From: Adineta vaga | Lineage: Eukaryota; Animalia; Rotifera | Reading direction: 5' to 3' | Assembly (NCBI GenBank): GCA_021613535.1 | Contig: CP075492.1 | Span: 1,612,001 to 1,676,000 of the forward strand | Length of the DNA stretch: 64,000 bases | Shown: positions 1 to 41,361 of the stretch, one piece after another | Layout: the number at the start of each line of letters is the position of its first letter | Numbering within the stretch: position 1 is the stretch's first letter | Position numbers and translations under genes: made by a program | Notes under the pieces: model-generated | What the model was told of the DNA's origin: nothing | Databases searched by the model: none | What the model saw: the letters and a program-made list of their open reading frames with translations, nothing else

Positions 1-1016
1 TTTCTTTGATGGTGCATCAACATCAATCTTTATTCGTGATCTTTCTCTTGCTTATCAAGACGATAGTTCGCTTTTTGTTGATGTCAATTCATTTCAATAT
101 ATTGATTATTCTATTCATGAACATATTATGGCTATGACATTAGCTCGTGAATTTTGGTTTGCTCAACTTCATGGATGTGATCTTCAACATTCATTATCAT
201 TACCATATGATCGATCTCATTCATCAAACCACCACCGATCTGGCTTAGCTTCTACAACTCAAATAACATTAAATGAGTCTGTATGTACATCATTTCTACA
301 TTATGCATCATCACATCATCTAACACTTTTTCAACTTGGACTATCGATATTCTATGTATTTCTATTCAAATTAACTCACAATGACACTGATTTGTGTGTT
401 GGTACTATCAATGCCAATCGATATCGATCTGAATTATATAATATGATAGGAATGTTTGTAGCAACATTACCATATCATATTCACCTCGATGCAGATTGGT
501 CATTTGATGAACTTGTTCATCATGTAAGAGAAATGTGTGTATCAATTCTTGAACATTCTCATTATCCACTTCAACACATTCTCAATGACTTTCATCTCAA
601 TCAATCTAATCTTAGATTTCTGGAAACAATGTTCGATTTTATCACTTTGTCCGAAAATGAGACGTACTTATCGATGAATGATACAAGATTAGAAGAAGTA
701 TCATTAGATCAATCATATGAAGTTAGTAAATTTGATTTCATGTTATCATTTGTTTATAATCCAACGTTAGAAAATAATACCAGATTGTCATTCAATTTTA
801 TATGTTCTCATGATTTATTCGATGAGAAAACTGTTGCAAGTATAGCTGAACGATTTTCGTATTGTATGGAACAATTGTTGTTTCGATCGAATGAAATAGT
901 GGATGAAGTGAAGACCTGTGTGACCACTGTACCGAAAGTTAACCTAATATTACCGAAGGAAGGAAATGAAATCAATGATGTTATATTTCAGCGACAATCA
1001 AATATCACAAATGAAG
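1..1016 (+). CDS. NRPS exon: 3' part of a post-T condensation domain belonging to an upstream module
   Basis: Near-identical to the C domains at 15499-16998 and 32452-33951. Starts inside the FFDG motif and ends at donor GAA G|GTAGG. Confidence 0.9.
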
Positions 1017-22000: not shown

Positions 22001-25000
22001 TTTCGGGTTGCATTTAATTCGAATAGGTGTAAGGTGCATATCAGTTGCATAGTTTAATGATTGATTATTTATTGTGTAAGAACTTTTGTATCCCATTTTT
22101 GATTTTTCAAAATCCGATGAGTTCGTTTTCTTGTACGATTATAATAATAGTTTGATTTCGTGTTTGCGCTTGCACTTGTATTTGTCCTTGAATCATTTGT
22201 TTGATGGAATTTATCGTATAATTTCTGCATTCCGTAACCATCTACATGTTTATCTTTCTCATAAGATGATTCGTTGTCATAGTGGTTATAGTCGTATGCC
22301 ATTTTATTTCTTAATTTTGGATAATTAAGAAAAATGTGATTTAGATATTTTTTTGACTTTTAACCTTTTCTATTTCGTATTCTCTTCTATAGATATATAC
22401 GTCTTATCGTTAGAAGAGGATATAGGGGAGTGGCAGAGTGTCCTTGATTCCGTTGTCATCTATGGCATGTTCCGTTCATTTACTTTTCTCCAAAAAAACG
22501 ATTAAAGGATTTAATAGAAACGGAGGTATAAATAGAAGCATGATGAACCATTCTTTATGGAAAAACGTAAACTACACCGATAACTACTTCATTTAGAATT
22601 AAATTTGTAGTTTTCTGATAGTTCAAAGGAATAATCATGTTAAATGTTTCAAAAACTTTAGAGAAATTCATAGCTGCTCCTTGTTGCCTTTACAGCAGTT
22701 CAAAAGCAGTCACGTTCTTTCATTTCTCATTCACAACTGATATCTAACAGATGAGCACTTAGCTGCCATTTGCTTGAACACTAAATCTACTTCTCATAGA
22801 AAGAGAGAATATACATGAACTTAACAGTAGGCAGAATGCTACGTCGTGTTCTCGACGCCATTCATACTTCTATGGTTACAACAAATATCCTACAATGATT
22901 GTAGCACCAGCATCGTATGCACAAGCTCGCATTTGGCTTGATGAACAAATGCGATTTGATCCTGATCATCCACAAGTTGCAATCTATAACATGCCTTTCG
23001 TTTATCACTTCTCGCCGAATAATACCATATCAATCAAACAACTACAACATGCACTTTATCTCACTGTCAACAAACACCTTTCACTTCATACAGCATTCAT
23101 CTTCGACAAGAATAAGAATATATTGATGCAACGAATTGTGGAAATTAATAACAATCACATGACATTATTTACATTTACTGAGAGCACTTATCAAACACAA
23201 GAACAACTCAACAATATCATACAAGAAGAGAAAAGAAATCCTCAACTTTTTAATCTTGCTCAAGGTCTGGTCTTTCGATGTCATCTTGTTTATTACAAAC
23301 AAATCTCTTCCGAAAAGCTACTCTCAGAGAAAGATATCATCATCTTCAATTTTCATCATGCAGCATTTGATTTTCCATCAATGCAAATATTTCTTCATGA
23401 TCTTAATCAAGCATATATAACAGGCCAATTACTTGACGACAACAACGATAAAACCAATCTTCGTTATCTTGATTGTAAATATACACACTTATTGCACTTT
23501 TCTCTTTATCATATATCACTTGTCATCATTTTCTAGATGCTGCCATCGAACAACAAATGTCAATGACTGGTGCACAAATGTTTTGGCTTGATACTCTACA
23601 TAATAGTAAACTTGATCAACCATTATCATTACCATACGATCGATATCGTCTTGCAAATGAACATCGAACTGGTCGTGGAACATCGATTTCTTTTGATTTT
23701 GGACAAGATCTTTCACATTACTTTCTTTCGTATGCATCGACAAATAACATGTCACTTGAATATTTGTCACTCATCACTTACTTCATCTTCTTATTCAAAT
23801 TAACCAACGGAGAAAAAGATCTATGTATTGGAATGAATACACATGGACGATATCGAGATGAACTTCGATCGATCATTGGAATGTTTGCCAATGCTATTCC
23901 TCTTCGATATCAACTTGATCCTCACTCATCCTTTCATAAAGTCACTGAAGAAATGCGATCAGTGATCAGCAATACTATGAAATATTCATATTTTCCACTT
24001 CAGCGTATTCTTGCTCAACATCCTCATCTATCAAATCCTGCATTTCTTGATACATCATTCGACTTTACATCATCTATGACAAAGGCTGATGAAAACAAAA
24101 TAATGCTTGGTGATAATGCACTTATTCTAGCACCATATTCGATTGAGATTAGTGAAGATGAAATCATGAGTGAATTTGATTTTATTGTCACTTTCCATCA
24201 TACTTTGGATCTTAATGAACTCTCATGTTCAATCAATGCATCATTCGATTTATTTCACATAGAAACTGTTAATAAGATTACACAACAGCTTCATTCGATG
24301 TTATATCAATTATCGACATCTGGTCATAGTCAATTGACGAAACCACTCTATGAATTGTCATTAACATTACCAAATGAACAATTACTTCTACAATCAATGA
24401 ATAATACAGAAATATCATTTCCGTCTGCCAAATGTATTCATCATGAGTTTGTTTCTAAAGCAATGAAATATTCACAAAAGCTTGCTGTTGAATTAGATGA
24501 TCAATCGTTGACATATTGTGAGCTGTTGTATTATGTTCAGGTATTATCTTTGACTTTATTGAATAACTATTGTATAAAAGTTGGTGAAATCATTTGCCAA
24601 TGTGTCGAAAGAAGTATATCAATGGTAAGTTGATGAATGAGAAACTTATCTCTTGATATATTCATGGGAAATCGTTCTTCACTCTAGGTGATTGGCATAA
24701 TGGGAATTCTAATGGCTGGTGGTGCATATTGTCCACTATCACCTCGAGATCCACCACATCGTTTATGTAAACTTATCGAACAAACGCGGAGTCTTCTTGT
24801 TCTTGGTCATTGGATGAACAAAAAATAAGCTAGATGATGAAAATATCTTGGTTAATATGGACTCAGTCTTGACTAATAATGACAAACAAAATAACATAAA
24901 CTTTGATGCTTTATCAAACGTCGAAGTGGCACTAGAAAATATTGCGTATATCATTTTCACAAGTGGCTCAACTGGATTACCAAAAGCGGTTCGAAAATAG

Positions 25001-28000
25001 ATTATTTTTTCATTTAACAATATTTACTATAGTTCATTATAGGTCCATGTTCGTCATAAAAATTTTACTCAATTCTTATACTCATTAAGTTACACTGATG
25101 TTATAAATAAAAACGATACTATTCTCCAGATGGCGCGTTGTTCCTTTGACGTGCATCTACAAGATATAATGGGTACCCTTATCAGTGGCGGTACGCTAGT
25201 TATGCTACATCCAAGTGGAATTCTTCAGTTTGACTATCTAGTAACAGTTATAAACGACAAACAGACTACTTCGTTTACAACGGTTCCAAGTCTGCTGAAT
25301 GGTTTCTTTACGTTTCTGCGCCAAAAAAGGCATCGCAATAATCTAAAGTATTTGCGGTCAGTCGCCATTGGTGGTGAGTAAAACTAAGGGAAGTTGTTCG
25401 ATGTTGTATGAACGGACTTCAATTATAGGTGAACCGTGTTCGTCGAAGCTGGTAAACTTGATTTTCAGTTTGTTGACAAATAGTTGTCAATTATGGAACT
25501 TATATGGTCCAGCCGAAACGACAATTGATAGCACATATCATCTGTTGAATTCCCAAAAATTATCGAAAAACATTCCGATTGGTCGGCCACTTCCAAACTA
25601 TCACCATCTAATTGTGGATAAATATTTGCAAAGTGTATTGATAAACCAAGAAGGAGAGCTACTTGTTGGAGGAGTAGGCGTCTTTGCTGGTTATCTTGGC
25701 CGCGACGATTTAACATCGAAAGGGATGGTTTATATCAATGATGTGTTGTTTTATCGAACTGGTGACCTTGTCAAGATAGATCATCATAATCTTATTCGAT
25801 ATCAAGGAAGAAAAGATTTTCAAATCAAATTACACGGACAAAGAATTGAACTTGGTGAAATTGAACGATGTCTACTCGGCATATCATCCATCTCAGCTTG
25901 TGTTGTCATCAAATGGGGTGAAGATCATCTTGTTGCTTATGTTCAAAGTTCAGTCATAAATGAAAAAGAACTACGTGACCATTGTCAATCACATCTTCCA
26001 CCACATATGATTCCATCTCGTTTCATTATTCTTGATCAATTACCACTGAATGCAAATGGAAAAATCGATCGAAAACGTCTCCTATCACCTGATTTCGCTT
26101 CTCTCTCTTCAATAAATCTCAACGATGCTAACAAATTGTTAGAACCAACAAGTAAAATTGAATCTATTATCCATCGCATATGGTGTGATCTATTGAAACA
26201 AAAACAAATCTCTATAAATACAAACATATTCACTATTGGTGGTCATTCATTAATTATTATGGAACTTCTACATCAATATAAAGTAGAATTTCGATTAGAA
26301 ATAAATTCCATTGCTATTAGTGATCTATTTCAACAACCAACAATCATTGATCATGCACATCTTATTCATCAGATTCTACATACCCAATTGAGTAAAGATG
26401 ATTACTGTTGGTATTCATTAAATATCCTTAGAGGTAAAGGTATAATTTGAAAAAAGCTCTGGTAATCAGATTCTATCTCTCATTTTAGCTAAAGCATCGT
26501 TTGCTCAAGAACGCATCTTCTTACATGAACAAATTCGTTTCTCATCAGATCACAGAAATAACATGTATGTTATTCCATTACTTTACCGAGTTTCATTTTC
26601 TACAGATCATATACTCATATCTCGATTTTATCATGCATTTCAACTCGTCATTAAAAAACATAGTATTCTTCGTACAGCACTTTATCTTGACACAAATGGT
26701 ATCATAATGCAACATTGCATAGGTGAAAATACTACTCAAGACGATATGAAAACTTATGAATTTTCGGTTAGAACTCTTCACAGTGGTAATGATTTTGAAC
26801 TGGCTGACGTTATCAAAGGAATACTAAATAAATCTGATCTATTCGATTTATCAAGAGGACATGTTATCAATTGTCATATCCTTCGTCATCATTGTTCTGA
26901 TAATGATTTATTGACAAAAGATGATTACATATTGATAACTATTCATCATGCAATGTTTGATGGATTTTCTACGGAAATCTTTCTTCGTGATCTTTCTCTT
27001 GCTTATGATTCGAATGATGACCTTCTGTCGAATGATAATACTTTGCAGTATATCGATTATTCTATTTATGAACATAGTATGGATATGACATCTGCTCGTC
27101 AATTCTGGCAATTCGAACTTCAAGGATACAATTTTCAACATCGGTTATCATTGCCATTTGATCGACAACATTTAGGAAGTGATCAACGATCAGGTTTAGC
27201 TCATGTTACTGAAATGACTTTTGATAATGATATTGTACACTCATTTATACAATATGCATCATCACATAATCTTACATATTTTCAACTTGGATTAGCTACA
27301 TTCTATGCATTTCTCTTCAAATTAACTCATCATGAAACTGATCTATGTATTTCTTCTATTAATGCTAATCGATATCGAAACGAACTACAAGATATGATAG
27401 GAATGTTTGTATCAACACTACCACATCGTTGTCAACTTGATCATCATTGGTCATTTGATGAACTTGCTCAGCATGTACGAGAAAAATGTGTATCAATTCT
27501 TGCATATTCTCATTATCCATTACAACATGTTCTTGATGATTTTCAAGTTAATCGATCAAATGTTTCATTTCTTGAAACAATGTTTGATTTTATCACAATC
27601 TCATCTGAAATCGATCGTTTATCTTTGGGCAACGAAAATTTGCAGCAAGTATCAATAGAACAATCGTTGGATTTGGCAAAATTTGACTTTTCATTGACAT
27701 TTATTTATAATTCATTCTCGAATGACGATCAGTTAGCATTTTCTATGATTTGTTCACGTGATATTTTCGAAAAAACATCAGTCACACAATTTGCTGAACG
27801 ATTTCACTGTATAATGGAACAACTTTTCGAAATGGAATCGAACAAGACTCTGTCGAATGACTTGGAAATATCGATAGATCGAATTTCTCTTATCTTAAAA
27901 CAGGAAGCTGAAGAAATGAAACTGACTGTTTTTCGTCGAATGGAAAATATTGTTGATGAAGGTTAGGAAATTAATATTGATTTAGCTATTTCCTGTTTTG

Positions 28001-31000
28001 CATTTATGTGAGACTATAAGTTGATTCTGATGTTGACAATAGATTAACCAATATTGTAATGAGAGATACTGTTTATTATCAATATTAGACTTACCAATGA
28101 CTTTTCTAAGATTTCATAGGATCAAGCTGTCTGTCAACTGTATAATTGCATTCAACGTCAGATAGCAAGTTAAAGATGTATATAGAATAAATCTACTAGT
28201 GAAATGAAACGAAATTTTTGTATTGTTTGTCACATCAAATTTTTATATGAATTGAAAACATTACAAAGAGATAAAACATGATGCTATAGTGACTACCATG
28301 ATGTAAGCAAAAGTGTCTTATTGAGTATGAATATTTTCTTCATTTATCTTTTTCTTCTTCGTTGTTTTGTGTTTTATTCTTTTCTCTTTGAGTTCCTTTC
28401 TTTTTGTCGTATCTGATAGATATCTATCTGATTTCAGGTTTCAGGAGTGGAAGTCTAGGTGTATCTTGGTGTTTACATTTGTCAATTTTTGAGTAGTCCA
28501 AAGTGAGACAATTTCAAAATTTCCTTCATATATTTCGATTGGAATGATATTGAGACCTATAGTTATCACCATTGAACAGAGAACATGAAAATACAACGAA
28601 CAATGTGTAGAAAAAAATAACGATTATTTTTCTGACCTGTTTCTGAATTCTTTTCGAAGACTAGTAGTTACAATTACTTCCTTATATGTTGAGTGTACAT
28701 TCTCTAATCTTGAACAAACTGTGAGTTATGTGAATCATTAAAGTATGCTGCTTTTATCTCATAAGAAAATAACTCTATTCACGTGTGCTAGTTTTTTTAA
28801 ATAAAATAGCAACTAAGTAATGGTTGTGATTATGAGAAAGGAAATTTTCATAGATATTATGTTGATTCCACTTGATAAACGTTTGTATACTGTAGCGCCA
28901 GCTTCATATGCTCAGAGTCGCATTTGGCTTAATGAACGAATGCAGTTTGATCCTAATAAACCGCAAATAGCAATCTGCAATATATCATTCCTTTATCGTC
29001 TCTCGCATCACCATACTTTATCAATTGAACGACTTCGACATGCACTTCAGCTACTAGTCATGAAACACCAGTCACTTTGTACATTACTTACTTTCGATAA
29101 AGAGAAGAATCTGCTTATGCAAAGAATCGCCAATTTTAATAACGTGACAAGTGAATTGTATACATTTGTCGAAAGTGTTTACGAAACTGATGAGCATCTT
29201 AACGATATAATATACGAGGAAAAACGGAACCCTCATCTTATCGATCCTTCTCGAGGTCTTGTCTTTCGATGTCATATTGTCTATTACAAGCAAATCTCTT
29301 CAGATGATCTTCTCACCCATAAAGATATCATCATTTTCAACTTTCATCATTCTTTATTTGACTATCCATCTGTGAATGTATTTCTTCATGATCTCAATCA
29401 AATATATACAACAGGTCAGTCAACAAATGATATTGAGACCAATCTACGATATCTTGATTGTAAGTATTCCATATTTTTGTCTATTTATTTGAATCAATCA
29501 TCCTTCACCTCTCTTTCTACTTGCAGATGCAGTCATCGAACGGCAACTACCAATGACTAGCGCAAGTATGTTCTGGCTTGATACTCTTCATAATTGTGAT
29601 CTCGATCGGCGACTATCATTACCATTTGATCGACATCGACTTCTCAATGAACATCCAACCAATCATAATACATCCGTTTCTTTCGATTTTGATTCAAATC
29701 TTTCTCATCATCTTCTCATTTATGCATCATCGTACAACGTATCATTGCAACATCTTGTACTCACCATCTACTATATCTTTCTATTCAAAATAACAAATGG
29801 AGAAAAAGATTTAACGATTGCAATGACTATTGATAATCGATATAGAGAAGAACTTAAACCAATCATTGGATTATTTGAGAATATTGTTCCATTCAGATGT
29901 CAATTAGACTCTCATTGGTCTTTTCGTCAATTACTTGATTATATTCATGAGATAACAACCAATACGATGAGATATTCATGTTTTCCTCTTCAACGCATAC
30001 TTGATCAACATGGAACTGTTTCGAAACCTAGATTTCTTGATACTTCATTTGAATTTCGATCATATCAAAACAATAAAAGTATGATTGACAATAGTGAACT
30101 TTATGAGATGCTTATTGACAATATCAATAATGACGATGTAACCATGCGTGAAAGTGATTTCTCGTTTCTAATCAATCATGATACCCATATCGATCAAGTC
30201 TCCTGTACAATCAATGCATCACTAGACTTGTTCAACATTGAAACTATTCATATTATTGGACAACGATTTCATTTCATGTTACATCAATTATCTTCCTCGA
30301 TTGCCAATCAACCGAAAAAGCCAATTTACGAATTGTCATTAATATTACCAAATGAACAATTACTTGTACAATCAATGAATAATACGGAAGTGTCATTTCC
30401 TTCTGTCAAATGTATTCATCATGAATTTGTTTCTAAAGCAATGATATATTCACAAAAGCTAGCTGTTGAATTAGATGAACAATCGTTGACATATAGTGAA
30501 CTATTGTATTATGTTCAAGTATTATCTATGAATCTTCTAAATGAATATCATATATCTCCAGGTGAAATCATTTCTCAATGTGTCGAAAGAAGTATATCAA
30601 TGGTGAGCTACTTGATATAAGTATCTGCTGTTTTAAATTAGGAAATCTGGTATAATTTAGATAATTGGTATAATGGGAATTTTAATGGTAGGTGGTGTAT
30701 ATTGTCCGTTATCACCTCGAGATCCAAAAGATCGTTTATATGCATTAGTACAACAAACGATGTCTTGCCTTATTCTTGTTCATCGGTCTACTGTGACGAA
30801 AATGCTAGATGTTGCGAAGTTATTAGATATTGAAGTAATACTGACTAATGCGAATTGGAGCGACGATCTCAAATTAGATAAAGTATCAAGCATAATAGTA
30901 TCACCTAATGATGTAGCTTACATTATTTTTACAAGTGGATCGACTGGCGTACCGAAAGCGGTATGCTTTTCACACTCTATATCAGATCGCTTTTAGTTTG

Positions 31001-34000
31001 TTGCTTTATCCTAGGTTCAAGCCAGACACCGAAATTTTTCAAATTTCATACAAGGTTTGCATCATACTGGTGTATTGCAGACGAACGATGTTGTGGCGCA
31101 AATATGTGCTCCTACGTATGATGTGCATGTCATGGAAATTATTGGTAGTTTAGTTTTGTGTTCATCTCTTGTACTGTTACGCCCTTATGGCAACATGGAC
31201 TTTTTGTATTTTACAAACATATGTGAAACTAAAAAAATCACATGTATTGCACCTGTTCCGACTTTCCTAGATTATTTGTGTGATGCTATTGAACATTTAC
31301 AGAGTGATTCTTTGTTGACGATACGATCACTTTGCTTTGGTGGTAAGTAAATTATAAAAAATAGTGTTCAATGCATTTATCAAATTTCAAGGGGAACCTA
31401 TATCAAGTAAACTTGTTCAACGCTTACAAAAACACACTACCAACAATTGTGCCATGTATAATATATACGCGCCAGCTGAAACTACAGTTGTTTCTTTCTA
31501 TCACCGTGTCAATTTTATACGCCGTGAATCACATATTGCTCTTGGTAGATTACTCTCTAACGAGCACTATAAAGTATTGGATATTTACTTCCAGTATACA
31601 CCTGTCGGTCAACAAGGTGAATTATTTATTGGTGGAGCAGGTGTATTCGCTGGCTATCTTCACCGTATGGATTTAACATCCAAAGTTCTTCTTGAAATTA
31701 ACGATGAAAAGTTTTATCGGACGGGTGATCTCGTAAAAGTAGACCATGAGGGTCTTCTCCATTATGAAGGTAGAACCGATCATCAAATCAAATTACATGG
31801 ACAAAGAATTGAACTTGGTGAAATTGAACGATGTCTACTCAGCATATCATTCATCTCAGCTTGTGTTGTCATCAAATGGGGTGAAGATCATCTTGTTGCT
31901 TATGTTCAAAGTTCAGTCATAAATGAAAAAGAACTACGTGACCATTGTCAATCACATCTTCCACCACATATGATTCCATCTCGTTTCATTATTCTTGATC
32001 AATTACCACTGAATGCAAATGGAAAAATCGATCGAAAACGTCTCCTATCACCTGATTTCGCTTCTCTCTCTTCAATAAATCTCAACGATGCTAACAAATT
32101 GTTAGAACCAACAAGTGAAATTGAATCTATTATCCATCGCATATGGTGTGATCTATTGAAACAAAAACAAATCTCTATAAATACAAACATATTCACTATT
32201 GGTGGTCATTCATTAATTATCATGCAACTTCTGCATCGATTTAAAGTAGAATTTCGATTGGAAATAAACTCAATTGCCATTAGTGATCTATTTCAACATC
32301 CAACAATCATTGATCATGCACAACTTATTCATCAGATTGTACACTTCAAATTGAATAAAGATAATTATTGTTGGCATTCATTAAATATCCTCACAGGTAA
32401 AGGTATAATTTGAAAAATACTCTAATAATTATATTCTATTTCTTATTTAAGCTAAAGCATCGTTTGCCCAAGAACGCATTTTCTTAGATGAAAACATTCG
32501 CTTTTGTGCTTCTGCAGTAGATGATATTACAAATATGTATGTTATTCCATTAATATATCGTGTTTCATCGCTAAATATTCATCATATATCAATTTCACGA
32601 TTATATCATGCATATCAATGTATTATTAGAAAACATAAGATTCTTCGAACAGCACTTTACCTTGATCGAAATGGTGTCATTGTACAAGACTGTCGAAATA
32701 CGAATTACTCGCACAATGATATCGAAACATATGCTTTTTCAATAGTGAATGTCTCCAAAGAAGATCATGATAAGAGTGACGCTGTGAAGAGAATCTTGAA
32801 TAAATCTGATTTATTTGATTTATCAAAAGGACATGTCATTAATTGTCATATTCTTCGTTCTCAGAATAGTTCAAATGAAAATGATGATGACATGTTGACT
32901 AGAGATGATTTGATATTATTTACTATTCATCATGCTTTCTTTGATGGTGCATCAACATCAATCTTTATTCGTGATCTTTCTCTTGCTTATCAAGACGATA
33001 GTTCGCTTTTTGTTGATGTCAATTCATTTCAATATATTGATTATTCTATTCATGAACATATTATGGCTATGACATTAGCTCGTGAATTTTGGTTTGCTCA
33101 ACTTCATGGATGTGATCTTCAACATTCATTATCATTACCATATGATCGATCTCATTCATCAAACCGCCACCGATCTGGCTTAGCTTCTACAACTCAAATA
33201 ACATTAAATGATTCGGTATGTACATCATTTCTACATTATGCATCATCACATCATCTGACACTTTTTCAACTTGGACTATCGATATTTTATGTATTTCTAT
33301 TCAAATTATCTCACAATGACACTGATTTGTGTGTTGGCACTATCAATGCCAATCGATATCGATCTGAATTATATAATATGATAGGAATGTTTGTAGCAAC
33401 ATTACCATATCATATTCAACTCAATGCAGATTGGTCATTTGATGAACTTGTTCATCATGTAAGAGAAATGTGTGTATCAATTCTTGAACATTCTCATTAT
33501 CCACTTCAACACATTCTCAATGACTTTCATCTCAATCAATCTAATCTTAGATTTCTGGAAACAATCTTCGATTTTATCACTTTGTCCGAAAATGAGACGT
33601 ACTTATCGATGAATGATACAAGATTAGAAGAAGTATCATTAGATCAATCATATGAAGTTAGTAAATTTGATTTCATGTTATCATTTGTTTATAATCCAAC
33701 GTTAGAAAATAATACCAGATTGTCATTCAATTTGATATGTTCTCATGATTTATTTGATGAGAAATCTGTCGCAACTATAGCCGAACGATTTTCGTATTGT
33801 ATGGAACAATTGTTGTTTCGATCGAATGAAACAGTGGATGAAGTGAAGACCTGTGTGAACACTGTATCGAAAGTTAACCTAATATTACCGAAGGAAGGAA
33901 ATGAAATCGATGATGTTATACTTCAGCGACAATTCAACAACTTCGATGAAGGTAGGCTTATTTTCTAATAAAAAATTTGTTGTTGGTGTTAAAGTTGCAT

Positions 34001-37000
34001 ATTAGGACTAATATCTGATATAAGTCTGTTGTGCAGACGCCAAGTAGCTATGTTATGATTTGCATATGCGACAATTGTTTGCATGCTTTTTCCTTGTAGA
34101 AGCAGCGGCATCTGCAAGGTTACTATCCAATATGTTGGCTAGCATTTTAGGAAATGCGTTGGTATGAAAATTGTGAGAAGTAGCTCATTCAAGAGAAATG
34201 TTTCGTTCTTGATTTTTTGAAATTTATTTCTTGAATTTTGACATCGAAGTTCGAAAACAGTACCTTGTCGATTTATGTAGAGTAGCATAGCAACTTAGCC
34301 GTTACACGTATGAAAGACGAATGGTTAATATTCGTTTGATCAGTTTGCCGTAGCCAAAAAAACAAAAATTCTGTTGCTTTACTTTGTGGTAGAGAACGTA
34401 ACATCTCAAAATTGCACGTTCACCAGTAGTATGTTTCGTGCATTTACTGTTTAGGGGAAATAAAAAAAATGATAATTGGAGAGACAGATCTAAAGACGGG
34501 CCTGATTTAATTTTCCGCTACAATAACTGAAACAAAAATAGTAACTGCTTAACGTCGAATTCAGTGTCTACCCTTATAACAGTTCTAAACAGTAGTCCTG
34601 TTTAGTATTCCAATCACTCCAGCATAATTTAAAACGGTTTCTCACGTAATTTTGCCGTGTTTTATGAGCAGTCACACTCTTCAATTTTTTTATTCCCAAC
34701 TCATTTTCGAAAACAAAAGTTAGCCATCACTCGCACGAGCACTGAATTTTTAATCATAAGGAGAAAAGACAAGGAAAACGACTAGTAGGCAAAATGTTAC
34801 ATCATCCCTCTCTAAATCATTGATACTTCTACTGTAGCACCAGCATCGTATGCACAAGCTCGCATTTGGCTTGATGAACAAATGCGATTTGATCCTGATC
34901 ATCCACAAGTTGCAATCTATAACATGCCTTTCGTTTATCACTTCTCGCCGAATAATACCATATCAATCAAACAACTACAACATGCACTTTATCTCACTGT
35001 CAACAAACACCTTTCACTTCATACAGCATTCATCTTCGACAAGAATAAGAATATATTGATGCAACGAATTGTGGAAATTAATAACAATCACATGACATTA
35101 TTTACATTTACTGAGAGCACTTATCAAACACAAGAACAACTCAACAATATCATACAAGAAGAGAAAAGAAATCCTCAACTTTTTAATCTTGCTCAAGGTC
35201 TGGTCTTTCGATGTCATCTTGTTTATTACAAACAAATCTCTTCCGAAAAGCTACTCTCAGAGAAAGATATCATCATCTTCAATTTTCATCATGCAGCATT
35301 TGATTTTCCATCAATGCAAATATTTCTTCATGATCTTAATCAAGCATATATAACAGGCCAATTACTTGACGACAACAACGATAAAACCAATCTTCGTTAT
35401 CTTGATTGTAAATATACACACTTATTGCACTTTTCTCTTTATCATATATCACTTGTCATCATTTTCTAGATGCTGCCATCGAACAACAAATGTCAATGAC
35501 TGGTGCACAAATGTTTTGGCTTGATACTCTACATAATAGTAAACTTGATCAATTACTACCATTACCATACGACCGATATCGTCTTGCAAATGAACATCGA
35601 ACTGGTCGTGGAACATCGATTTCTTTTGATTTTGGACAAGATCTTTCACATTACTTTCTTTCGTATGCATCGACAAATAACATGTCACTTGAATATTTGT
35701 CACTCATCACTTACTTCATCTTCTTATTCAAATTAACTAATGGAGAAAAAGACCTATGTATTGGAATGAACACAGAGGGACGTTATCGAGATGAATTTAG
35801 ATCTATCATTGGAATGTTTGTCAATGCTATTCCTCTTCGATATCAACTTGATCCTCACTCATCCTTTCATAAATTCACTGAAGAAATGCGAGTGTTGATC
35901 ACAAATACTAAGAAATATTCATATTTTCCACTTCAGCGTATTCTTGCTCAACATCCTCATCTATCAAATCCTGCATTTCTTGATACATCATTCGACTTTA
36001 CATCATCTATGACAAATGCTGATGAAAACAAAATAATGCTTGGTGGCAATGAACTCATTCTAGCGCCATATTCGATTGAGATTAGTGAAGATGAAATCAT
36101 GAGTAAATTTGATTTTATTGTCACTTTCCATCATACATTGGATCTTAATGAACTCTCATGTTCAATCAATGCATCATTAGATTTATTTCACATAGAAACT
36201 GTTAATAAGATTGCACAACAACTTCATTCGATGTTATATCAATTATCGACATCTAGTCATAGTCAACTGACGAAACCACTCTATGAATTGTCATTAATAT
36301 TACCAAATGAACAATTACTTGTACAATCAATGAATAATACAGAAATATCATTTCCGTCTGTCAAATGTATTCATCATGAGTTTGTTTCTAACGCAATGAA
36401 ATATTCACAAAAGCTTGCTGTTGAATTAGATGATCAATCGTTGACATATTGCGAGCTGTTGTATTATGTTCAGGTATTATCTTTGACTTTATTGAATAAA
36501 TATTGTGTAAAAGTTGGTGAAATCATTTGCCAATGTGTCGAAAGAAGTATATCAATGGTAAGTTGATGAATGAGAAACTTATCTCTTGATATATTCATGG
36601 GAAATCGTTCTTCACTCTAGGTGATTGGCATAATGGGAATTCTGATGGCTGGTGGTGCATATTGTCCACTATCACCTCGAGATCCACCACATCGTTTACA
36701 TTCACTTGTAGAACAAACTCAAAGTCGAATTGTTCTCACTCACTGGTTAACAAAAAATAAGCTAGATGATGAAAATATCGTAGTCAATATTGATTTACTA
36801 GTGACTAATAGTGACATGCAAAGTAATATGCGCATGGAGGAAATTTCGAGCGTCTTAGTCACCTCAGAAAATATTGCATATATTATTTTTACAAGCGGAT
36901 CAACGGGAGTGCCAAAACCGGTGGGTGATAGATGGAGGAGGAGTAGTGAATATAGTATGACTTTTTGTTATTTATAGGCTCAACTTCGGCACAGAAATTT

Positions 37001-40000
37001 CACTCAATCTATTCAATCTTTAGTAAATATTGATTTATTCAACAGAGGGGATACAATTATACAAATTGCTAGATGTTCATTTGATATTCATGTTCAAGAA
37101 ATACTTGGAGGTGTATCGATTGGAGCAACTGTAGTGATGTTACATCCGGGAGGAAATTTAGATTTTGAGTATCTGTCCGTGACACTGGAAAGGAAAGAAA
37201 TCACTTTTCTATATACTGTACCAACATTACTGCAACATCTTTTCACTTTTATTACCAACAATAAACAATCTTATGTTACCAAATATTTGCGATCTTTGTG
37301 TACAGGAGGTAAATGGAGTCAATATTTTAATTGTTTCCTATTGTTGTTTTTTCTATAATACTAGGTGAACGTTGTTCCGTCAATCTTATTAAGTCAATAG
37401 GAAGTAATATTGCTCAGCAATATACTCTGTGGAATTTATGTGGTCCAGCTGAAACAACGTTTCAATCTTTATTCCATCGAATCGACTTAAGAGCAGATGC
37501 AGAAAATATACCTCTTGGTAGACCCCTTCCAAATTATCATTGTACAGTTGTAGATTGTTTTGGTCAACGTAGTTTTGTCGGTCAAGAAGGTGAAGTTTTA
37601 GTGAGCGGCGTAGGCATCTTTGCTGGTTATCTTAGACATAATGACTTGACAGCGCAAGCCTTTTTAGAAATTAATAGTGATATAAATTATCGTACAGGTG
37701 ATCTGGTTAAAATGGATTGCAATGGTGTCCTTCATTATATCGGTCGAAAAGATTTTCAAATCAAATTACACGGACAAAGAATTGAACTTGGTGAAATTGA
37801 ACGATGTCTACTCGGCATATCATCCATCTCAGCTTGTGTTGTCATCAAATGGGGTGAAGATCATCTTGTTGCTTATGTTCAAAGTTCAGTCATAAATGAA
37901 AAAGAACTACGTGACCATTGTCAATCACATCTTCCACCACATATGATTCCATCTCGTTTCATTATTCTTGATCAATTACCACTGAATGCAAATGGAAAAA
38001 TTGATCGAAATCGTCTTCCAAAACCAGATTTCCGGTTATCAGCAAACTTAGATGATAGTGACAATGTACCTCGCACAACTTTGGAACAACAATTGCAGAA
38101 TATTTTTAGTCAGGCTTTTAGTATTGAATCGCCACACTTCGAGGTATCCTTTAGTCATCTTGGTGGAACATCGCTGAATGCTATTCATGCACTTACATTG
38201 ATTCGTCAGGAAATTAATGCTAACATTGACATCGGACTTATTTTCACTAATCCATCCATTCGACAGTTGGCTCAAGCTATTGAAGCTTCATTAATATTTG
38301 ATAAACAAGAAGACATACTTCTCATTAACAGTGAAGATCATGAAACATGTATTCATCTTGAACCATCATTTTTGATAGAATCTTTGGGCATTATAGCTCT
38401 TATTTGTCATGGGGTACTACCAATCCTCATAATTGCTAAATGGTGCCCACTCCTGTTCTTCTTATTACCTGCAATTCATCTTCTATTCTATGCCATTTGT
38501 TCCCGTCTACTCTTGTTACAAAACAATACCGTTGACAACATGTTCTCATGGAACTATTATAGATGGTGGATTTTAGATCGACTATGGAACAACAATACAT
38601 TTTGGTTGAGACATATACTTGGCACATCATTCTACAATTATTATCTTCGTCTATGTGGTGCTCATGTTAATCTCCATGCACATATTTATACGACAACTAT
38701 CGATGCTCCATGGTTGTTAGAGATTGGTGATGGAACTTGGATTGCAGATAAAACTATTCTGAATTGTCTGCATTTCAATAATAATTATACCTTTGAACTA
38801 CGTTCGATTAAAATCGATTCTGATTGTTCAATTGGTACAAGATCAACTCTGTTTGATGGAGTAGAAATGCAAAGTAATGTATTTGTTCAACCAATGTCTG
38901 CAGTCACTGGTTTTATTCCATCTCAAACAATTATTGATGGTGAAGAATATAAATCAGCTTCATCAGACATCTCCATGACAGTTAATAATAGATCATTCTC
39001 AGTATGGCACAAGATCTATCAAGTTTTTGTACTTATGTTGTTAACTTGTATCCATTTTATCCTTTTAATTATTATCTACAAAGTTTATTTACTTGTGCCA
39101 CTACGGTTCCCTCTTAATGTTGCTCTTTGTTGGACTTTGTGGTCATTTATTGGCTGTTGCGTCTCACTTTTCCTACTCAAATTTGCAGTTGGTTATTGTG
39201 TTGCTGGTGAAACATATCCGATTGCATCATGGTCATATCTAAATAAATTGTGGCTACGTCAACTGATCGTCTCAAGTTTTCATCATACTTGGTTACTAAC
39301 GACAAATTATGATCATCTTTATCCTGTTATACTTCGTTGGTTAGGTGCTCATGTTGAAAATAATGTTAAACTTGCTGAAATCCATACGTATCTAGCTTAT
39401 CCAACAAATCTACTAAGAATAGAAACAGGTGTTACTAGTTTTGGTTATGTTCTCTTAGTCCCAACGGAGGTGACATTTTCAGGTGGACATCTTATAGATC
39501 ACATAACAGTTGGATCTTATACAAATATTGCCAACAAATGTTCAATATTACCGGGCAGTTGCCTTGCACCTTATACTATGGTTGGTAATTTCACACGCAT
39601 CACTCGAGAAACAGCAACTAATGAAGGAAACATTGTTATGGGTGTGCCAGCTCGTGTCATGCCGTTTCAAATGCCTATAGTATCGACTATGGAAGATCAA
39701 ATTGAAGTGATTCCATTTTGGAAGACATGGTTTACTTATTTCACTAGTAAATATCTTCTCGTGGTCATATATTCTTTATGTGGACTTGTTGGTGGTTCTA
39801 TTATTCATACGATATTTGTTTGCAGTTTCTATCGATGTCGCTCATACATACATCATCAAACCGTGGATCTAATAATATCACAATTACAACAAGATCATCA
39901 ACGATTTATTTGTCCATTCCTGGGCAATACACAATGGTTGGTTCGATTGTTCCGAGCATTTGGTGCTCACATTGGGAAAAACGTAGTATTACCTGATATT

Positions 40001-41361
40001 AATTCTCTCTTTGATTATAAGTTAGTGACTATTGAAGATGATGTTCGATTCAATATCAATGCTCACATTATGGTAAGACATGACTATTTATTTATTATCT
40101 TCATATCAAAGATGGGCACGATTCGGTTCGACAAAACACTTCTGTAATTTCTCTCGGTTTCGGTTCGGTTGAGTTTTTGCTTAAATTGATTTAACTTAGA
40201 TGACTACTTATATTGATATACGCGTAATTGAAATCGTATTATTAGATGCTTTTATTGGTAGATCTAAAGTCTGGAAAAGTGAAGGTATGAAATGAAAATC
40301 AAAGAAATTCATGTTACCATATATAAAGCAAAGTTTATATCTATATGAAGTTGGTGTAGAATTGCGGAATTAAATTAGTATCTTTATAATTATGATGTTA
40401 TCCACAAGCCGCAGCGTTGAACTGATAACTTTTGATTAGAGATAAACAAAATCATTTATAGAAACTCGAAAATTTGTACTGCGCGTCTTTATATGTAAAA
40501 TGTTCAGAAAGCTTAATATCTTACTACACTTTTTGAAAGAATGTTCCAATTCTTTAAAAGTTCTACGAATATTTTCCGAAATTGCCTAATATTTCTCAAA
40601 AGTTCTTCAGATCTTTCCCTATGTTTTGATGTGTTTCTAAATACTTGTTGAAGTATTAAAAAGACCCGTATCTCATTGAGAAGAAGTTGCAAACTTTTTG
40701 GTTTATTAACAAAGTAATACATGAACTAGGATACTCGTTGTCATTGTTCTACTAATACTGATTTTGAAACTCTCATTACTCGATAGAGTTTGTTTAGGCA
40801 AATAGTGTTATTTTCTAAACAGGCAAAATTACATACTTTCGATTAATATACTTTCATGAGACTAATTGTTCACAGAAACGACGCAAAGGAACTGCTAATA
40901 ATGTTACCTAATTTTATTTGTTACTAAGCGATTTTTCTCAACATATATGATTCGGGTCGGATCGGTTCGGATCCAGTTTTGACAAAATCGGTTCGATTCG
41001 GTTCGAATTTACTCCTAGAAATTTTCATAGGTTTTGGTTCGGTTCCGTTCTAAATCATGAATTTTTTCGGTGTCTCGGTTAGGTTTAAATTTTGAAAAAC
41101 ATAGACCGTGCCCATCTCTGCTTCATATACAATTCTTCTTATTATTCATTTCAGTGCCATACTTTTGAACAACGAATTTTAAAGCTAGCTCCTGTTACAG
41201 TCAAAAATTCATGTGTGTTCATGAGTCATTCAGGTGCGATGCCGGGATGCAAATTGATGGGCAATAATCGACTTTATCCTAATACGTTAATTATGAAAAA
41301 TGACATATTACCGGCGAATACTCATTGGAAAGGATTTCCTGCGCGTCAGTCACGCAATTAA
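1..41361 (+). CDS. Giant multi-exon, multimodular nonribosomal peptide synthetase (5'-partial): C-[C-A-T-C]x4-C-A-T-Pls-like terminal membrane region
   Basis: Repeated C motifs (HHAFFDG, HHAAFDF, HHAMFDG, HHSLFDY), A motifs (YIIFTSGSTGxPK, YGPAE, YRTGDL, GRKDFQIKLHGQRIELGEIE, LPLNANGKIDR) and T motifs (GGHSL, GGTSL). The ORF fragments are joined in frame by GT-AG introns. Inter-module introns (1017-1905, 6995-11911, 16999-22904, 27962-28895, 33952-34837) are all phase 1 (GAA G|gt...ag|CA or CG CCA GCx, giving E-A-P-A-S-Y). The stop is at 41359-41361. There are three apparent 1-nt frameshifts. Confidence 0.85.
1906..6994 (+). CDS. NRPS module 1 (C-A-T-C)
   Basis: Introns 2473-2534, 3623-3685, 3985-4045, 4377-4433 and 5439(or 5445)-5493. 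Apparent frameshifts near 3843 (one base missing, TAG results) and near 5740 (extra A relative to paralogous copies). Confidence 0.88.
8745..10347 (-). CDS. Transposase (CENP-B/Tc5-type HTH, DDE_1 domain, C-terminal Cys/His cluster), split by a 1-nt frameshift
   Basis: HTH motif FAATDFWLHQFKRRH. Catalytic motifs NTDQSG, LLSDYWGGQ and IQPCDVYYNRQYK. ORFs 9514-10347 and 8745-9641 join if one base is removed from the T run at about 9576-9579. Confidence 0.88.
10513..10591. repeat. 31-bp tandem repeat (about 2.5 copies) in the transposon 5' region
   Basis: The unit aatggtaaaagatgatgaaactaggctgaac is repeated directly. Confidence 0.85.
11912..16998 (+). CDS. NRPS module 2 (C-A-T-C), no lesion seen
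   Basis: Introns 12482-12543, 13632-13694, 13995-14051, 14383-14438 and 15444(or 15450)-15498. The spliced frame is open and the core motifs are present (the A5 motif reads NLCGPAE). Confidence 0.9.
17740..20640 (-). pseudogene. LINE ORF2 (APE endonuclease plus reverse transcriptase), multiply frameshifted
   Basis: APE motifs GGVAIL, VYVPP and GDFNAKH. RT motifs RPISLLPNLSKLLE, QSGF, VDFKNAFD, PQGSVLA, FADD and KYLG, spread over at least four ORF fragments. Confidence 0.9.
20646..22302 (-). pseudogene. LINE ORF1 (gag-like, three zinc-knuckle-like motifs, C-terminal coiled coil), broken near the 5' end
   Basis: Motifs CTRCKCPEHSRNTC, CRRCGED...HDQC and CHHCGDD...KC. Split into ORFs 22069-22302 and 20646-22013. 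Confidence 0.75.
22905..27961 (+). CDS. NRPS module 3 (C-A-T-C) with a divergent second C domain
   Basis: Introns 23475-23536, 24625-24687, 24989-25042, 25374-25428 and 26434(or 26440)-26488. An extra A near 24817 causes a frameshift. The second C domain has HHAMFDG. Confidence 0.88.
28896..33951 (+). CDS. NRPS module 4 (C-A-T-C) with a divergent first C domain and A domain
   Basis: Introns 29460-29526, 30603-30660, 30961-31014, 31343-31391 and 32397(or 32403)-32451. The first C motif is HHSLFDY and the A5 motif is NIYAPAE. Confidence 0.9.
34838..41361 (+). CDS. NRPS terminal module 5 (C-A-T) plus Pls/PosA-like transmembrane and hexapeptide-repeat terminal region
   Basis: Introns 35408-35469, 36558-36620, 36921-36977, 37309-37364 and 40073-41154. 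The T motif is LGGTSL. It is followed by hydrophobic helices alternating with three repeats (YLRLCGAHV, ILRWLGAHV, LFRAFGAHIG) and beta-helix-like segments. The last exon reads CHTFEQRILKLAPVTV...WKGFPA. Confidence 0.88.
40107..41120. mobile_element. Non-autonomous hAT-type element (MITE) in the last NRPS intron
   Basis: 8-bp TSD cttcatat (40099-40106 and 41121-41128). TIR CA(A/G)AGATGGGCACG. Clustered subterminal TTCGG repeats at both ends and no transposase ORF. Removing it leaves a 60-nt intron. Confidence 0.9.

What the first reader, a model, noticed from the sequence alone, without database searches (positions are those of the whole stretch)
37365..41361. Multimodular animal NRPS assembly line ending in a poly-amino-acid-synthetase (Pls-like) membrane domain
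Seen: after the last A-T didomain there is no thioesterase, reductase or terminal C domain. Instead about 650 aa of TM helices alternate with three tandem repeats (R-x-x-GAHV/I followed by hexapeptide/beta-helix-like sequence), ending CHTFEQRILK...WKGFPA. Known: this layout is that of the epsilon-poly-L-lysine synthetase Pls / TIGR02353 NRPS terminal domain. Characterised Pls-type enzymes are single-module A-T enzymes that polymerise one amino acid at the membrane. Inference: placed behind at least five elongation modules with at least four different A pockets, it could polymerise a pre-built oligopeptide, or transfer/export the peptide to a surface acceptor. That would be a hybrid membrane-anchored system in an intron-containing animal gene. 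I know of no characterised example, but could not search.
Basis: partly seen in the sequence, partly recalled or inferred. Interest (0 to 1): 0.92.

Follow-up and report, generated by a model that had tools for sequence, protein, structure and literature searches.

The report
Rotifer peptide synthetase with membrane release domain
A bdelloid-rotifer gene for a multi-module non-ribosomal peptide synthetase really does end in a membrane-embedded domain of the poly-lysine-synthetase type instead of a normal release domain. This layout is shared by about ten loci in the same genome and by proteins already in databases, but nobody has studied what it does.

Summary
One open exon (37365-40072) encodes the end of an A domain, a T domain and then three helical hairpins alternating with three beta-helix repeats. 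A last exon (41155-41361) completes the third repeat. Both exons hit NCBIfam TIGR02353 (Pls/PosA terminal domain; E 1.8e-29 and 3.8e-11), but far below its curated cut-off. AlphaFold2 models (pLDDT about 91) show the expected layout. RNA contigs cover the exon, and one shows the 56-nt intron just upstream spliced out.

The locus is not unique. The genome (100.8 Mb, 6 contigs, probably Adineta vaga) has about 17 such terminal domains, at least 9 of them behind arrays of condensation domains. A 4805-aa A. vaga protein of this type has been in GenBank since 2008. Multi-module versions also occur in a bacterial MAG, in metagenomes, in a chytrid and in another eukaryote. In a tree, the bdelloid domains form one clade, separate from the classical single-module polymerases.

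No paper found links bdelloid NRPSs to this domain or characterises a multi-module enzyme of this kind. Other first-stage readers flagged the same architecture at two other loci of this genome.

The most likely function is chain release by transfer of the peptidyl thioester to an amine at the membrane. Whether all modules here sit in one transcript is untested, because transposons lie in the long spacers.

The parts
2..1030 (+). Second condensation-family domain (C') of the module whose C-A-T lies just upstream of the window
   Evidence: 97% identical in DNA to the C' copies at 5979-7005 and 15983-17114. The same domain continues upstream at G000:C3:1611516-1611998.
1884..7005 (+). Module 'A': C (two exons), A (three exons), T, C'
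   Evidence: Open pieces and block identity to the scanned modules. Pocket code DGLVGCLIGK by manual anchoring.
8371..10985 (-). pogo/Tc5-type DNA transposon inside the spacer between modules A and B
   Evidence: DDE_1, Transp_Tc5_C and HTH_Tnp_Tc5 hits on ORFs 8745-10347. It has 314-bp terminal inverted repeats, 99% identical.
11907..17012 (+). Module 'B': C-A-T-C'
   Evidence: Open pieces. 98.6% DNA identity of 11907-15106 to 34833-38032. Pocket code DIQYCGLLQK.
17740..22013 (-). Remains of a reverse-transcriptase-bearing element in the spacer between modules B and C1
   Evidence: RVT_1 hit on ORF 18771-19628, with several broken minus-strand ORFs around it.
22900..27960 (+). Module 'C1': C-A-T-C'
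   Evidence: Pfam Condensation, AMP-binding, AMP-binding_C, PP-binding, Condensation. Pocket code DVQTAGLIDK.
28889..33951 (+). Module 'C2': C-A-T-C', ending at a conserved GAAG|GT donor
   Evidence: Pfam hits. Donor position. Pocket code DVMACGIVVK.
33952..34837 (+). Predicted 886-bp intron between C' of module C2 and C of the last module
   Evidence: Phase-1 donor and phase-1 acceptor are conserved at all five junctions in the window. The A. steineri orthologue has the same sites with a 190-bp intron. There is no in-frame ATG before the C1 motif of the next exon. No RNA evidence.
34838..36557 (+). Condensation domain of the last module (exons 34838-35407 and 35470-36557; the second also starts the A domain)
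   Evidence: Pfam Condensation on both pieces. The HHxxxD motif is present. Splice sites and phases.
36621..38032 (+). A domain of the last module (exons 36621-36920 and 36978-37308, plus the start of the exon beginning at 37365)
   Evidence: Pfam AMP-binding and AMP-binding_C. Intron 37309-37364 is removed in an RNA contig. Pocket code DIQYCGLFQK.
38087..38281 (+). Last T (carrier) domain, with an LGGTS phosphopantetheine site. Its sequence differs from the other T domains.
   Evidence: PP-binding at residues 242-306 of the exon. Block identity to the other modules stops at 38032.
38369..40072 (+). Pls/PosA-type terminal domain, first part. Helical hairpins at about 38369-38512, 39002-39190 and 39716-39841. 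Beta-helix repeats 1 and 2, and the start of repeat 3.
   Evidence: TIGR02353 E 1.8e-29. Hydropathy and motifs. AF2 model of the exon: pLDDT 90.7, pTM 0.90. RNA contigs lie on 38083-39699.
40073..41154 (+). Last intron (GT..AG, phase 0), enlarged by a dispersed repeat of about 1 kb at roughly 40107-41120
   Evidence: The sequence shows GT and AG at its ends. 14-nt inverted ends. At least 6 copies at about 70% identity elsewhere in the genome. The A. steineri orthologue has a 64-bp intron at the same codon.
41155..41361 (+). Last exon: end of beta-helix repeat 3, with the family motif H-x-F-E-x-R-x-x-K and the final W-K-G-F-P-A, then the stop codon
   Evidence: TIGR02353 profile positions 633-695, E 3.8e-11. 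Motif conservation counted across the 36 aligned family sequences.

Best explanation
This is the 3' end of a horizontally acquired, intron-bearing NRPS locus in a bdelloid rotifer (most likely Adineta vaga). Its last module (C-A-T) is fused in a single exon to a divergent member of the Pls/PosA terminal-domain superfamily. That domain has three transmembrane helical hairpins carrying three left-handed beta-helix acyltransferase-like repeats, and it replaces a thioesterase, reductase or terminal C domain.

By analogy with Pls and PosA, the domain most likely off-loads the product. In those enzymes the domain lets a free amine attack the aminoacyl thioester on the T domain. Here it would take the peptidyl thioester from the last T domain and transfer it to an amine (or other) nucleophile at the membrane. 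The peptide would then be released amide-capped, or, if the peptide itself offers a free amine, joined into oligomers.

Shown: the domain identity, the fusion, the transcription and splicing of the terminal exon, and the family-wide recurrence. Inferred: the acyl-transfer chemistry, the acceptor, and that all upstream modules feed this T domain.
For: Domain identity:
- TIGR02353 hits on both terminal exons.
- The family consensus motifs run across the exon junction without a gap.
- Three hairpin-plus-repeat units by hydropathy.
- AF2 models with pLDDT 90.6-90.7.
- Foldseek finds only hexapeptide-repeat acyltransferases: LpxD, LpxA, maltose O-acetyltransferase, GlmU, QdtC. This matches the published AlphaFold description of PosA (PMC10522769).

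Fusion and expression:
- A(C-terminal part)-T-terminal domain lie in one 2708-nt exon.
- A spliced RNA contig joins this exon to the previous A-domain exon, and further contigs lie on the membrane domain.

Multi-module polypeptides are real in this family:
- The paralogue at G000:C5:34.8-50.5 kb has T-C-A in one uninterrupted 1839-codon frame. It then reaches its Pls-type exon through introns of 29-62 nt.
- The A. steineri orthologue has the same C'-to-C splice sites with a 190-bp intron.
- At least 9 terminal-domain loci lie downstream of same-strand condensation-domain arrays.

Conservation: 61.7% identity to the A. steineri orthologue over 908 aligned residues. The Q/H/F/E/R/K motif of repeat 3 is largely kept.
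Against: - The match is far below TIGR02353's curated cut-off (102.6 and 42.1 bits against 423.1).
- The domain belongs to a clade separate from every characterised polymerase (FastTree only), so the chemistry may differ.
- No RNA contig covered 33700-37100, so the link from module C2 to the last module is untested.
- Spacers of 4.7-5.9 kb hold transposons.
- One upstream C' copy shows two apparent frame changes.
- The modules are 94-98.6% identical blocks, so misassembly is possible.
- Expression is low and patchy.
- No catalytic residue of Pls-type domains is established, so activity cannot be read from the sequence.
Confidence: 0.6

Rival explanations
1. The locus is a partly decayed, transposon-ridden array. 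Only the last one to three modules plus the membrane domain are made, or the C-A-T-C' units are separate proteins acting in trans. On this reading the 'five-plus module assembly line' is not one polypeptide.
For: Spacers of 0.85-5.9 kb separate C' from the next C, against 56-63 nt for the other introns. There is a structurally intact pogo/Tc5 element and a reverse-transcriptase element in two spacers. An ATG sits three codons before the C1 motif in modules B and C1. One upstream C' copy has two frame changes. No RNA contigs lie on 33700-37100.
Against: The donor GAAG|GT and the acceptor ...tgtag|C(A/G)CCAGCA are conserved in position and phase at all five junctions, including the 73-80% diverged module. 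The A. steineri orthologue keeps them. The last module's first exon has no in-frame ATG before its conserved C1 motif. A C' domain with an intact HHxxxDG makes little sense as a protein end. Repeats also explain missing contigs.
Confidence: 0.3
2. The terminal domain works as in classical Pls. It repeatedly polymerises only the amino acid loaded by the last A domain, through a side-chain amine, and the upstream modules are irrelevant or supply a primer.
For: This is the only chemistry demonstrated for the superfamily (PMC10522769). The genome also holds two canonical single-module copies.
Against: A complete C domain with HHxxxD sits directly before the last A domain. The last pocket code, DIQYCGLFQK, has no acidic residue of the kind used to hold a second amine (manual). 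The domain clusters with assembly-line-fused versions, not with the homopolymer synthetases.
Confidence: 0.08
3. The membrane domain is catalytically dead. It serves only to anchor the synthetase at a membrane or to help export, and release is done by another enzyme.
For: The score against the family model is low. No catalytic residues are known for the family. The Q of the repeat-3 motif is M here.
Against: The beta-helix repeats, the three G-A-x-I/V-G motifs and the H-F-E-R-K motif are retained across bdelloid paralogues that are only 30-40% identical. No other release domain is present in the gene.
Confidence: 0.07

Closest known systems
Epsilon-poly-L-lysine synthetase Pls (Streptomyces albulus) and delta-poly-L-ornithine synthetase PosA (Acinetobacter baumannii); NCBIfam TIGR02353
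   Same: A C-terminal domain directly after a T domain. Six membrane helices in three pairs alternate with three beta-helix repeats of about 180 residues. The G-A-x-I-G motifs and the final W-x-G-x-P-A are shared. There is no thioesterase.
   Different: Those enzymes are single A-T modules loading a diamino acid. Here a C domain and further modules precede the last A-T, and the pocket is not acidic. Sequence identity is only about 19%. The score is well under the curated cut-off, and the domain falls in a separate clade.
Adineta vaga NRPS-like proteins ACD54728.1/B3G4I0 (4805 aa) and ACD54724.1 (4858 aa); UJR17611.1 (3646 aa)
   Same: Same organism or genus, and the same architecture: several C-A-T modules ending in the divergent Pls-type domain. 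ACD54728.1 maps to G000:C5.
   Different: These are paralogues with 33-40% identity in the terminal domain. ACD54728.1 has one C between T and A in at least one module, not the C'-C tandem seen here. They are annotated only as 'NRPS-like' or 'hypothetical'.
Adineta steineri CAF0891652.1 (2464 aa), the likely orthologue
   Same: 61.7% identity over A-T-terminal domain. The intron positions are the same at the C'-to-C junction and inside repeat 3.
   Different: Its introns are short (190 and 64 bp). The gene model starts at C' and runs on into a methyltransferase, probably a merged neighbour. No further modules were found within about 10 kb upstream.
Multi-module fusions outside rotifers: MAG Pseudomonadota MFH0784194.1 (A-T-C-A-T-terminal domain, 2443 aa); metagenome proteins up to 4817 aa; chytrid KAJ3098703.1 (4025 aa); an intronless F-A-T-C-A-T-terminal-domain gene in eukaryotic assembly GCA_017884045.1
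   Same: A Pls-type terminal domain sits behind more than one NRPS module. In the tree they lie on the same side as the bdelloid clade.
   Different: About 19-25% identity. They have no introns and no C'-C tandem. All are uncharacterised.
Terminal condensation-type release with an amine, for example the putrescine-capped glidonins (PMC10587159, seen in the title and abstract listed only)
   Same: The functional analogy I propose: release of a finished peptide by aminolysis rather than hydrolysis.
   Different: That release uses a soluble condensation-fold domain, not a membrane-embedded beta-helix domain. There is no sequence relationship.

Membership tests
TIGR02353 (Pls/PosA family NRPS terminal domain) | HMM score at or above the curated cut-off (423.1 bits) | tested here: not met
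   102.6 bits (first exon) and 42.1 bits (last exon), scored apart. 92.1 and 43.6 bits in the six-frame genome search. Two other loci of the same genome reach 508-513 bits.
TIGR02353 (Pls/PosA family NRPS terminal domain) | Last domain of the protein, directly following a carrier (T) domain | tested here: met
   PP-binding at exon residues 242-306. The terminal-domain match starts at residue 364 of the same open exon, and the stop codon is at 41359-41361.
TIGR02353 (Pls/PosA family NRPS terminal domain) | Six transmembrane helices in three pairs alternating with three homologous soluble repeats | tested here: met
   Hydropathy and three R-x-x-G-A-H-V/I motifs. AF2 helices 17-41/43-64, 228-258/263-290 and 466-507, each followed by strands. 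The orthologue's full domain shows three hairpins and three beta-helices.
TIGR02353 (Pls/PosA family NRPS terminal domain) | Repeats fold as left-handed beta-helices (hexapeptide acyltransferase-like) | tested here: met
   Predicted only. Foldseek top hits are all LbH acyltransferases, at weak E values of about 1e-3. Pfam Hexapep is sub-threshold (E 0.0087). No solved Pls-type terminal domain exists to compare with.
Characterised cationic homopoly(amino acid) synthetases (Pls, PosA and relatives) | Single A-T module, with no condensation domain | tested here: not met
   A complete C domain lies directly upstream of the last A domain, and further C-A-T-C' modules lie on the same strand.
Characterised cationic homopoly(amino acid) synthetases (Pls, PosA and relatives) | A domain selects a diamino acid (Lys, Orn, Dab, Dap) | tested here: inconclusive
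   The manually anchored code DIQYCGLFQK has no acidic pocket residue. No predictor or assay was available.
Characterised cationic homopoly(amino acid) synthetases (Pls, PosA and relatives) | Iterative isopeptide bond formation with a free, untethered acceptor chain | not testable with these tools
   Needs enzymology or product analysis.
Modular NRPS | C, A and T domains in order, with an HHxxxD motif in C and a Ser in the T-domain GGxS motif | tested here: met
   Pfam Condensation, AMP-binding, AMP-binding_C and PP-binding in every module. HHAAFD in C, HHAFFDG in C', LGGTS in the last T.
Epimerisation (E) domain, as an identity for C' | Closest to E-type domains, with E-type N-terminal motif | tested here: not met
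   C' begins with a C1-type S-x-A-Q-x-R motif. Its best solved relatives are ordinary C domains (AB3403, TycC, Txo), and no chain among the 20 matches is titled as an epimerisation domain. Subtype models were not available.

The most novel reading that the evidence does not exclude
The bdelloid NRPS family, and a wider unstudied clade of Pls-like domains fused to multi-module NRPSs and PKSs in bacteria, fungi, algae and plants, uses a membrane-embedded triple beta-helix acyltransferase as a general release domain. On this reading the domain couples finished peptides to an amine acceptor. It may do so iteratively, producing oligomers of a pre-built peptide at the membrane of an animal cell. That would be a release logic not described for assembly lines.
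Probability: 0.3. Interest if true: 0.85.

Novelty: new variant of a known kind. Interest (0 to 1): 0.62.

Why it matters
Bdelloid rotifers carry dozens of horizontally acquired NRPS genes, some of which are switched on against a fungal pathogen (PMC11258130). Their products are unknown. The two surveys I could search do not mention how the chains are released.

A large share of these genes end in a Pls-type membrane domain. This gives a concrete, testable idea of what the products might be: amide-capped or oligomerised peptides made at a membrane. It also points to a separate, widespread clade of this domain attached to assembly lines, whereas all biochemical knowledge comes from single-module homopolymer synthetases. 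For enzymology it offers a candidate new off-loading mechanism. For rotifer biology it offers a handle on an animal-encoded antimicrobial chemistry.

Tried and rejected
- RNA test of the C'-to-C junction. All runs were Logan contigs, so depth and transcript ends could not be read.
- Solved-structure comparison with Pls. The PDB holds only A domains of Pls-type enzymes. Neither the window's domain nor a canonical bacterial homologue hits a terminal-domain structure. Foldseek E values are weak.
- E-domain identity for the single-exon domain after each T. Rejected on motif and nearest solved relatives.
- Named bacterial genomes with the multi-module variant. One scan of species-representative genomes with the MAG's terminal domain returned only that MAG.
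- Literature. TIGR02353, 'Pls-like' plus NRPS, bdelloid plus 'lysine synthetase', and multimodular plus poly-L-lysine synthetase gave nothing relevant.
- Joining exons. All searches were exon by exon, by reference. The complete terminal domain was folded only as the database protein of the A. steineri orthologue.
- dN/dS. Not attempted, because at about 60% protein identity synonymous sites are saturated.

Full report
**What is in the window.** The window is G000:C3:1612001-1676000 of a 100.8-Mb, six-contig genome. Closest proteins, and one identical sequence, are from Adineta vaga and other bdelloid rotifers, so I take it to be A. vaga. That identification is an inference.

The + strand from base 1 to 41361 is filled with NRPS exons. 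Pfam gives the repeating order Condensation (two exons), AMP-binding (three exons), AMP-binding_C, PP-binding, then a second single-exon Condensation-family domain that I call C'. There are five A domains in the window. Four more modules in the same orientation lie within 36 kb upstream.

Modules are near-copies of each other at the DNA level, 94-98.6% identical for most blocks and 73-82% for two. Downstream genes are ordinary metazoan ones: rhodopsin-type GPCRs, an ionotropic glutamate receptor and an LDLa protein. This is animal chromosome, not contamination.

**The terminal region.** Exon 37365-40072 lies in a 938-codon open frame.
- It encodes the C-terminal half of an A domain, a T domain (LGGTS) and then no thioesterase, reductase or C domain.
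- NCBIfam TIGR02353 (Pls/PosA terminal domain) matches exon residues 364-770 (E 1.8e-29).
- The 68-codon last exon, 41155-41358, matches the very end of the same profile (positions 633-695, E 3.8e-11).
- Hydropathy shows three pairs of membrane helices.
- In an alignment with 35 relatives, the family consensus of repeat 3 (A-x-x-Q-x-H-x-F-E-x-R-x-x-K) runs straight across the proposed exon junction. His, Phe, Glu, Arg and Lys are kept, and Gln is replaced by Met.
- The intron 40073-41154 has GT..AG ends. It is long only because it holds a dispersed repeat of about 1 kb. The A. steineri orthologue has a 64-bp intron at the same codon.

**Structure prediction.** AlphaFold2 gave pLDDT 90.7 and pTM 0.90 for the window's exon part. 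It gave pLDDT 90.6 and pTM 0.90 for the orthologue's complete domain. Both show three helical hairpins, each followed by short helices and a beta-helix. This is the layout published for the PosA model (PMC10522769). Foldseek against the PDB returns only hexapeptide-repeat acyltransferases, weakly. No Pls-type terminal domain has been solved.

**Transcription.** Four runs of one 2024 study hold parts of the exon. One contig skips 56 nt with GT..AG ends between 37306 and 37363, so it is spliced RNA. Other contigs lie on 38083-39699. Coverage is low and patchy. Nothing was laid on 33700-37100, which consists of repeated module sequence.

Splice sites and phases of the last module are mutually consistent: 34838-35407, 35470-36557, 36621-36920, 36978-37308, 37365-40072 and 41155-41361.

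**Is it multi-modular?** Every C'-to-C transition has a long spacer:
- 0.85-0.89 kb in three cases;
- 4.9 kb in one case, holding a pogo/Tc5 transposon with 314-bp inverted ends;
- 5.9 kb in one case, holding reverse-transcriptase remains.

All five transitions keep the same phase-1 donor (GAAG|GT) and phase-1 acceptor before the C1 motif, including the diverged module. The last module's first exon has no in-frame ATG before that motif. The A. steineri orthologue has the same two sites only 190 bp apart.

In the paralogue that encodes GenBank ACD54728.1 (4805 aa, G000:C5), T-C-A lie in one uninterrupted 1839-codon frame. The route from there to its Pls-type exon uses introns of 29-62 nt. So multi-module polypeptides ending in this domain are real in the family. 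For this locus, continuity is well supported for the last two modules. It remains plausible but unproven across the transposon-bearing spacers. One upstream C' copy shows two frame changes. The near-identical blocks also leave room for assembly error.

**How common is it?** The genome has 34 exon-level matches to TIGR02353, which I group into about 17 loci. Two loci score over the curated cut-off and are collinear with bacterial single-module enzymes. The others score about 100 bits, like this one. At least nine of them lie downstream of same-strand arrays of condensation domains.

An exhaustive profile-free search found 559 relatives. The close ones are from bdelloids (Adineta steineri and Rotaria by name), and the annotated long ones include UJR17611.1 (3 modules).

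Outside rotifers the domain follows:
- two or more NRPS modules in a Pseudomonadota MAG;
- large NRPSs with condensation domains in metagenome proteins of up to 4817 aa and in a chytrid;
- two NRPS modules in an intronless gene of another eukaryote;
- a PKS in a green alga.

A FastTree of 173 domains puts all 23 bdelloid divergent copies in one clade (support 100). That clade sits next to these fused versions and apart from a 117-member clade of classical single-module enzymes. Long branches and the quick method make the deeper joins provisional.

**Mechanism.** In Pls and PosA the domain lets a free amine attack the aminoacyl thioester on the T domain. Placed after a complete module chain, the same chemistry would release the finished peptide by aminolysis at the membrane. 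Oligomerisation would need a free amine in the peptide.

My manual reading of the pockets gives DGLVGCLIGK, DIQYCGLLQK, DVQTAGLIDK, DVMACGIVVK and DIQYCGLFQK. No acidic pocket appears in the last module, which speaks against classical diamino-acid polymerisation. This reading is weak evidence.

The domain between T and the next C is not E-like by motif or by nearest solved relatives. Its role is open.

**Novelty.** I found no paper that links bdelloid NRPSs to this domain or characterises a multi-module enzyme ending in it. The sequences themselves have been public since 2008. Two other first-stage notes on this genome describe the same architecture elsewhere. I rate it a new, uncharacterised variant of a known kind. 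It is real, recurrent and testable, but it is not a singular hybrid.

Noticed in passing
window 5617-7005, 15456-17012, 26446-27960, 32451-33951 (and 2-1030): Each module carries two condensation-family domains in tandem between T and the next A. The first is a single-exon C' with canonical HHAFFDG and a C1-type start. The second is a two-exon C with HHAAFD-F. C' is not E-like by motif or nearest solved structures, and its role is unknown. A paralogue (G000:C5) has only one C at one such position.
   Followed up: partly
window 11907-15106 vs 34833-38032: 98.6% DNA identity over 3.2 kb between module B and the last module. The identity ends exactly at the A/T boundary (38032), so only the last T domain is distinct. 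This suggests recent module duplication or gene conversion, and it is also a possible assembly hazard.
   Followed up: partly
window 8371-10985: A structurally intact pogo/Tc5-type DNA transposon on the minus strand, with 314-bp terminal inverted repeats 99% identical, sitting between two NRPS modules.
   Followed up: partly
window 17740-22013: A string of broken minus-strand ORFs, one with a reverse-transcriptase hit, filling the 5.9-kb spacer between modules B and C1. The 455-aa ORF at 20646-22013 has no Pfam hit.
   Followed up: no
window 40107-41120: A non-coding element of about 1 kb with 14-nt inverted ends, inside the last intron. At least six copies of about 70% identity lie elsewhere in the genome, so it looks MITE-like.
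   Followed up: partly
G000:C3:1575366-1612000 (upstream of the window; L015-L018): Four more modules on the same strand. One is split by about 7.5 kb between its C and A parts. One C' copy (1589636-1591147) has two apparent frame changes.
   Followed up: partly
G000:C1:11882475-11884550 (L001) and G000:C1:880858-882927 (L002): Two canonical Pls/PosA-type genes. They score 508-513 bits (over the curated cut-off) and are collinear with a bacterial single-module A-T-terminal enzyme, with short introns. The rotifer may therefore also make a classical homopoly(amino acid).
   Followed up: partly
L014 (GCA_017884045.1, JABBYD010000051.1:20207-49722): An intronless 3171-aa gene (formyltransferase-A-T-C-A-T-Pls-type domain). 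It lies among histone, DWNN and GPCR genes of an unidentified eukaryote, and is among the nearest non-bdelloid neighbours in the tree.
   Followed up: partly
proteins P0210 and P0225-P0237: The same terminal domain follows a full reducing PKS in the green alga Coccomyxa. In grasses it follows catalase/amine-oxidase-A-T fusions that are annotated as 4-coumarate-CoA ligase.
   Followed up: no
window 48865-50193 (minus strand): A 442-aa ORF with an Acyl_transf_3 membrane acyltransferase domain, 7.5 kb downstream of the NRPS end, among metazoan receptor genes. It is unclear whether it is related to the NRPS.
   Followed up: no
L013 17952-18942 (A. steineri): The orthologue's gene model runs on from the Pls-type domain into a class I methyltransferase after a gap of about 740 bp. 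This is probably a merged neighbouring gene. No such gene follows in the window.
   Followed up: no
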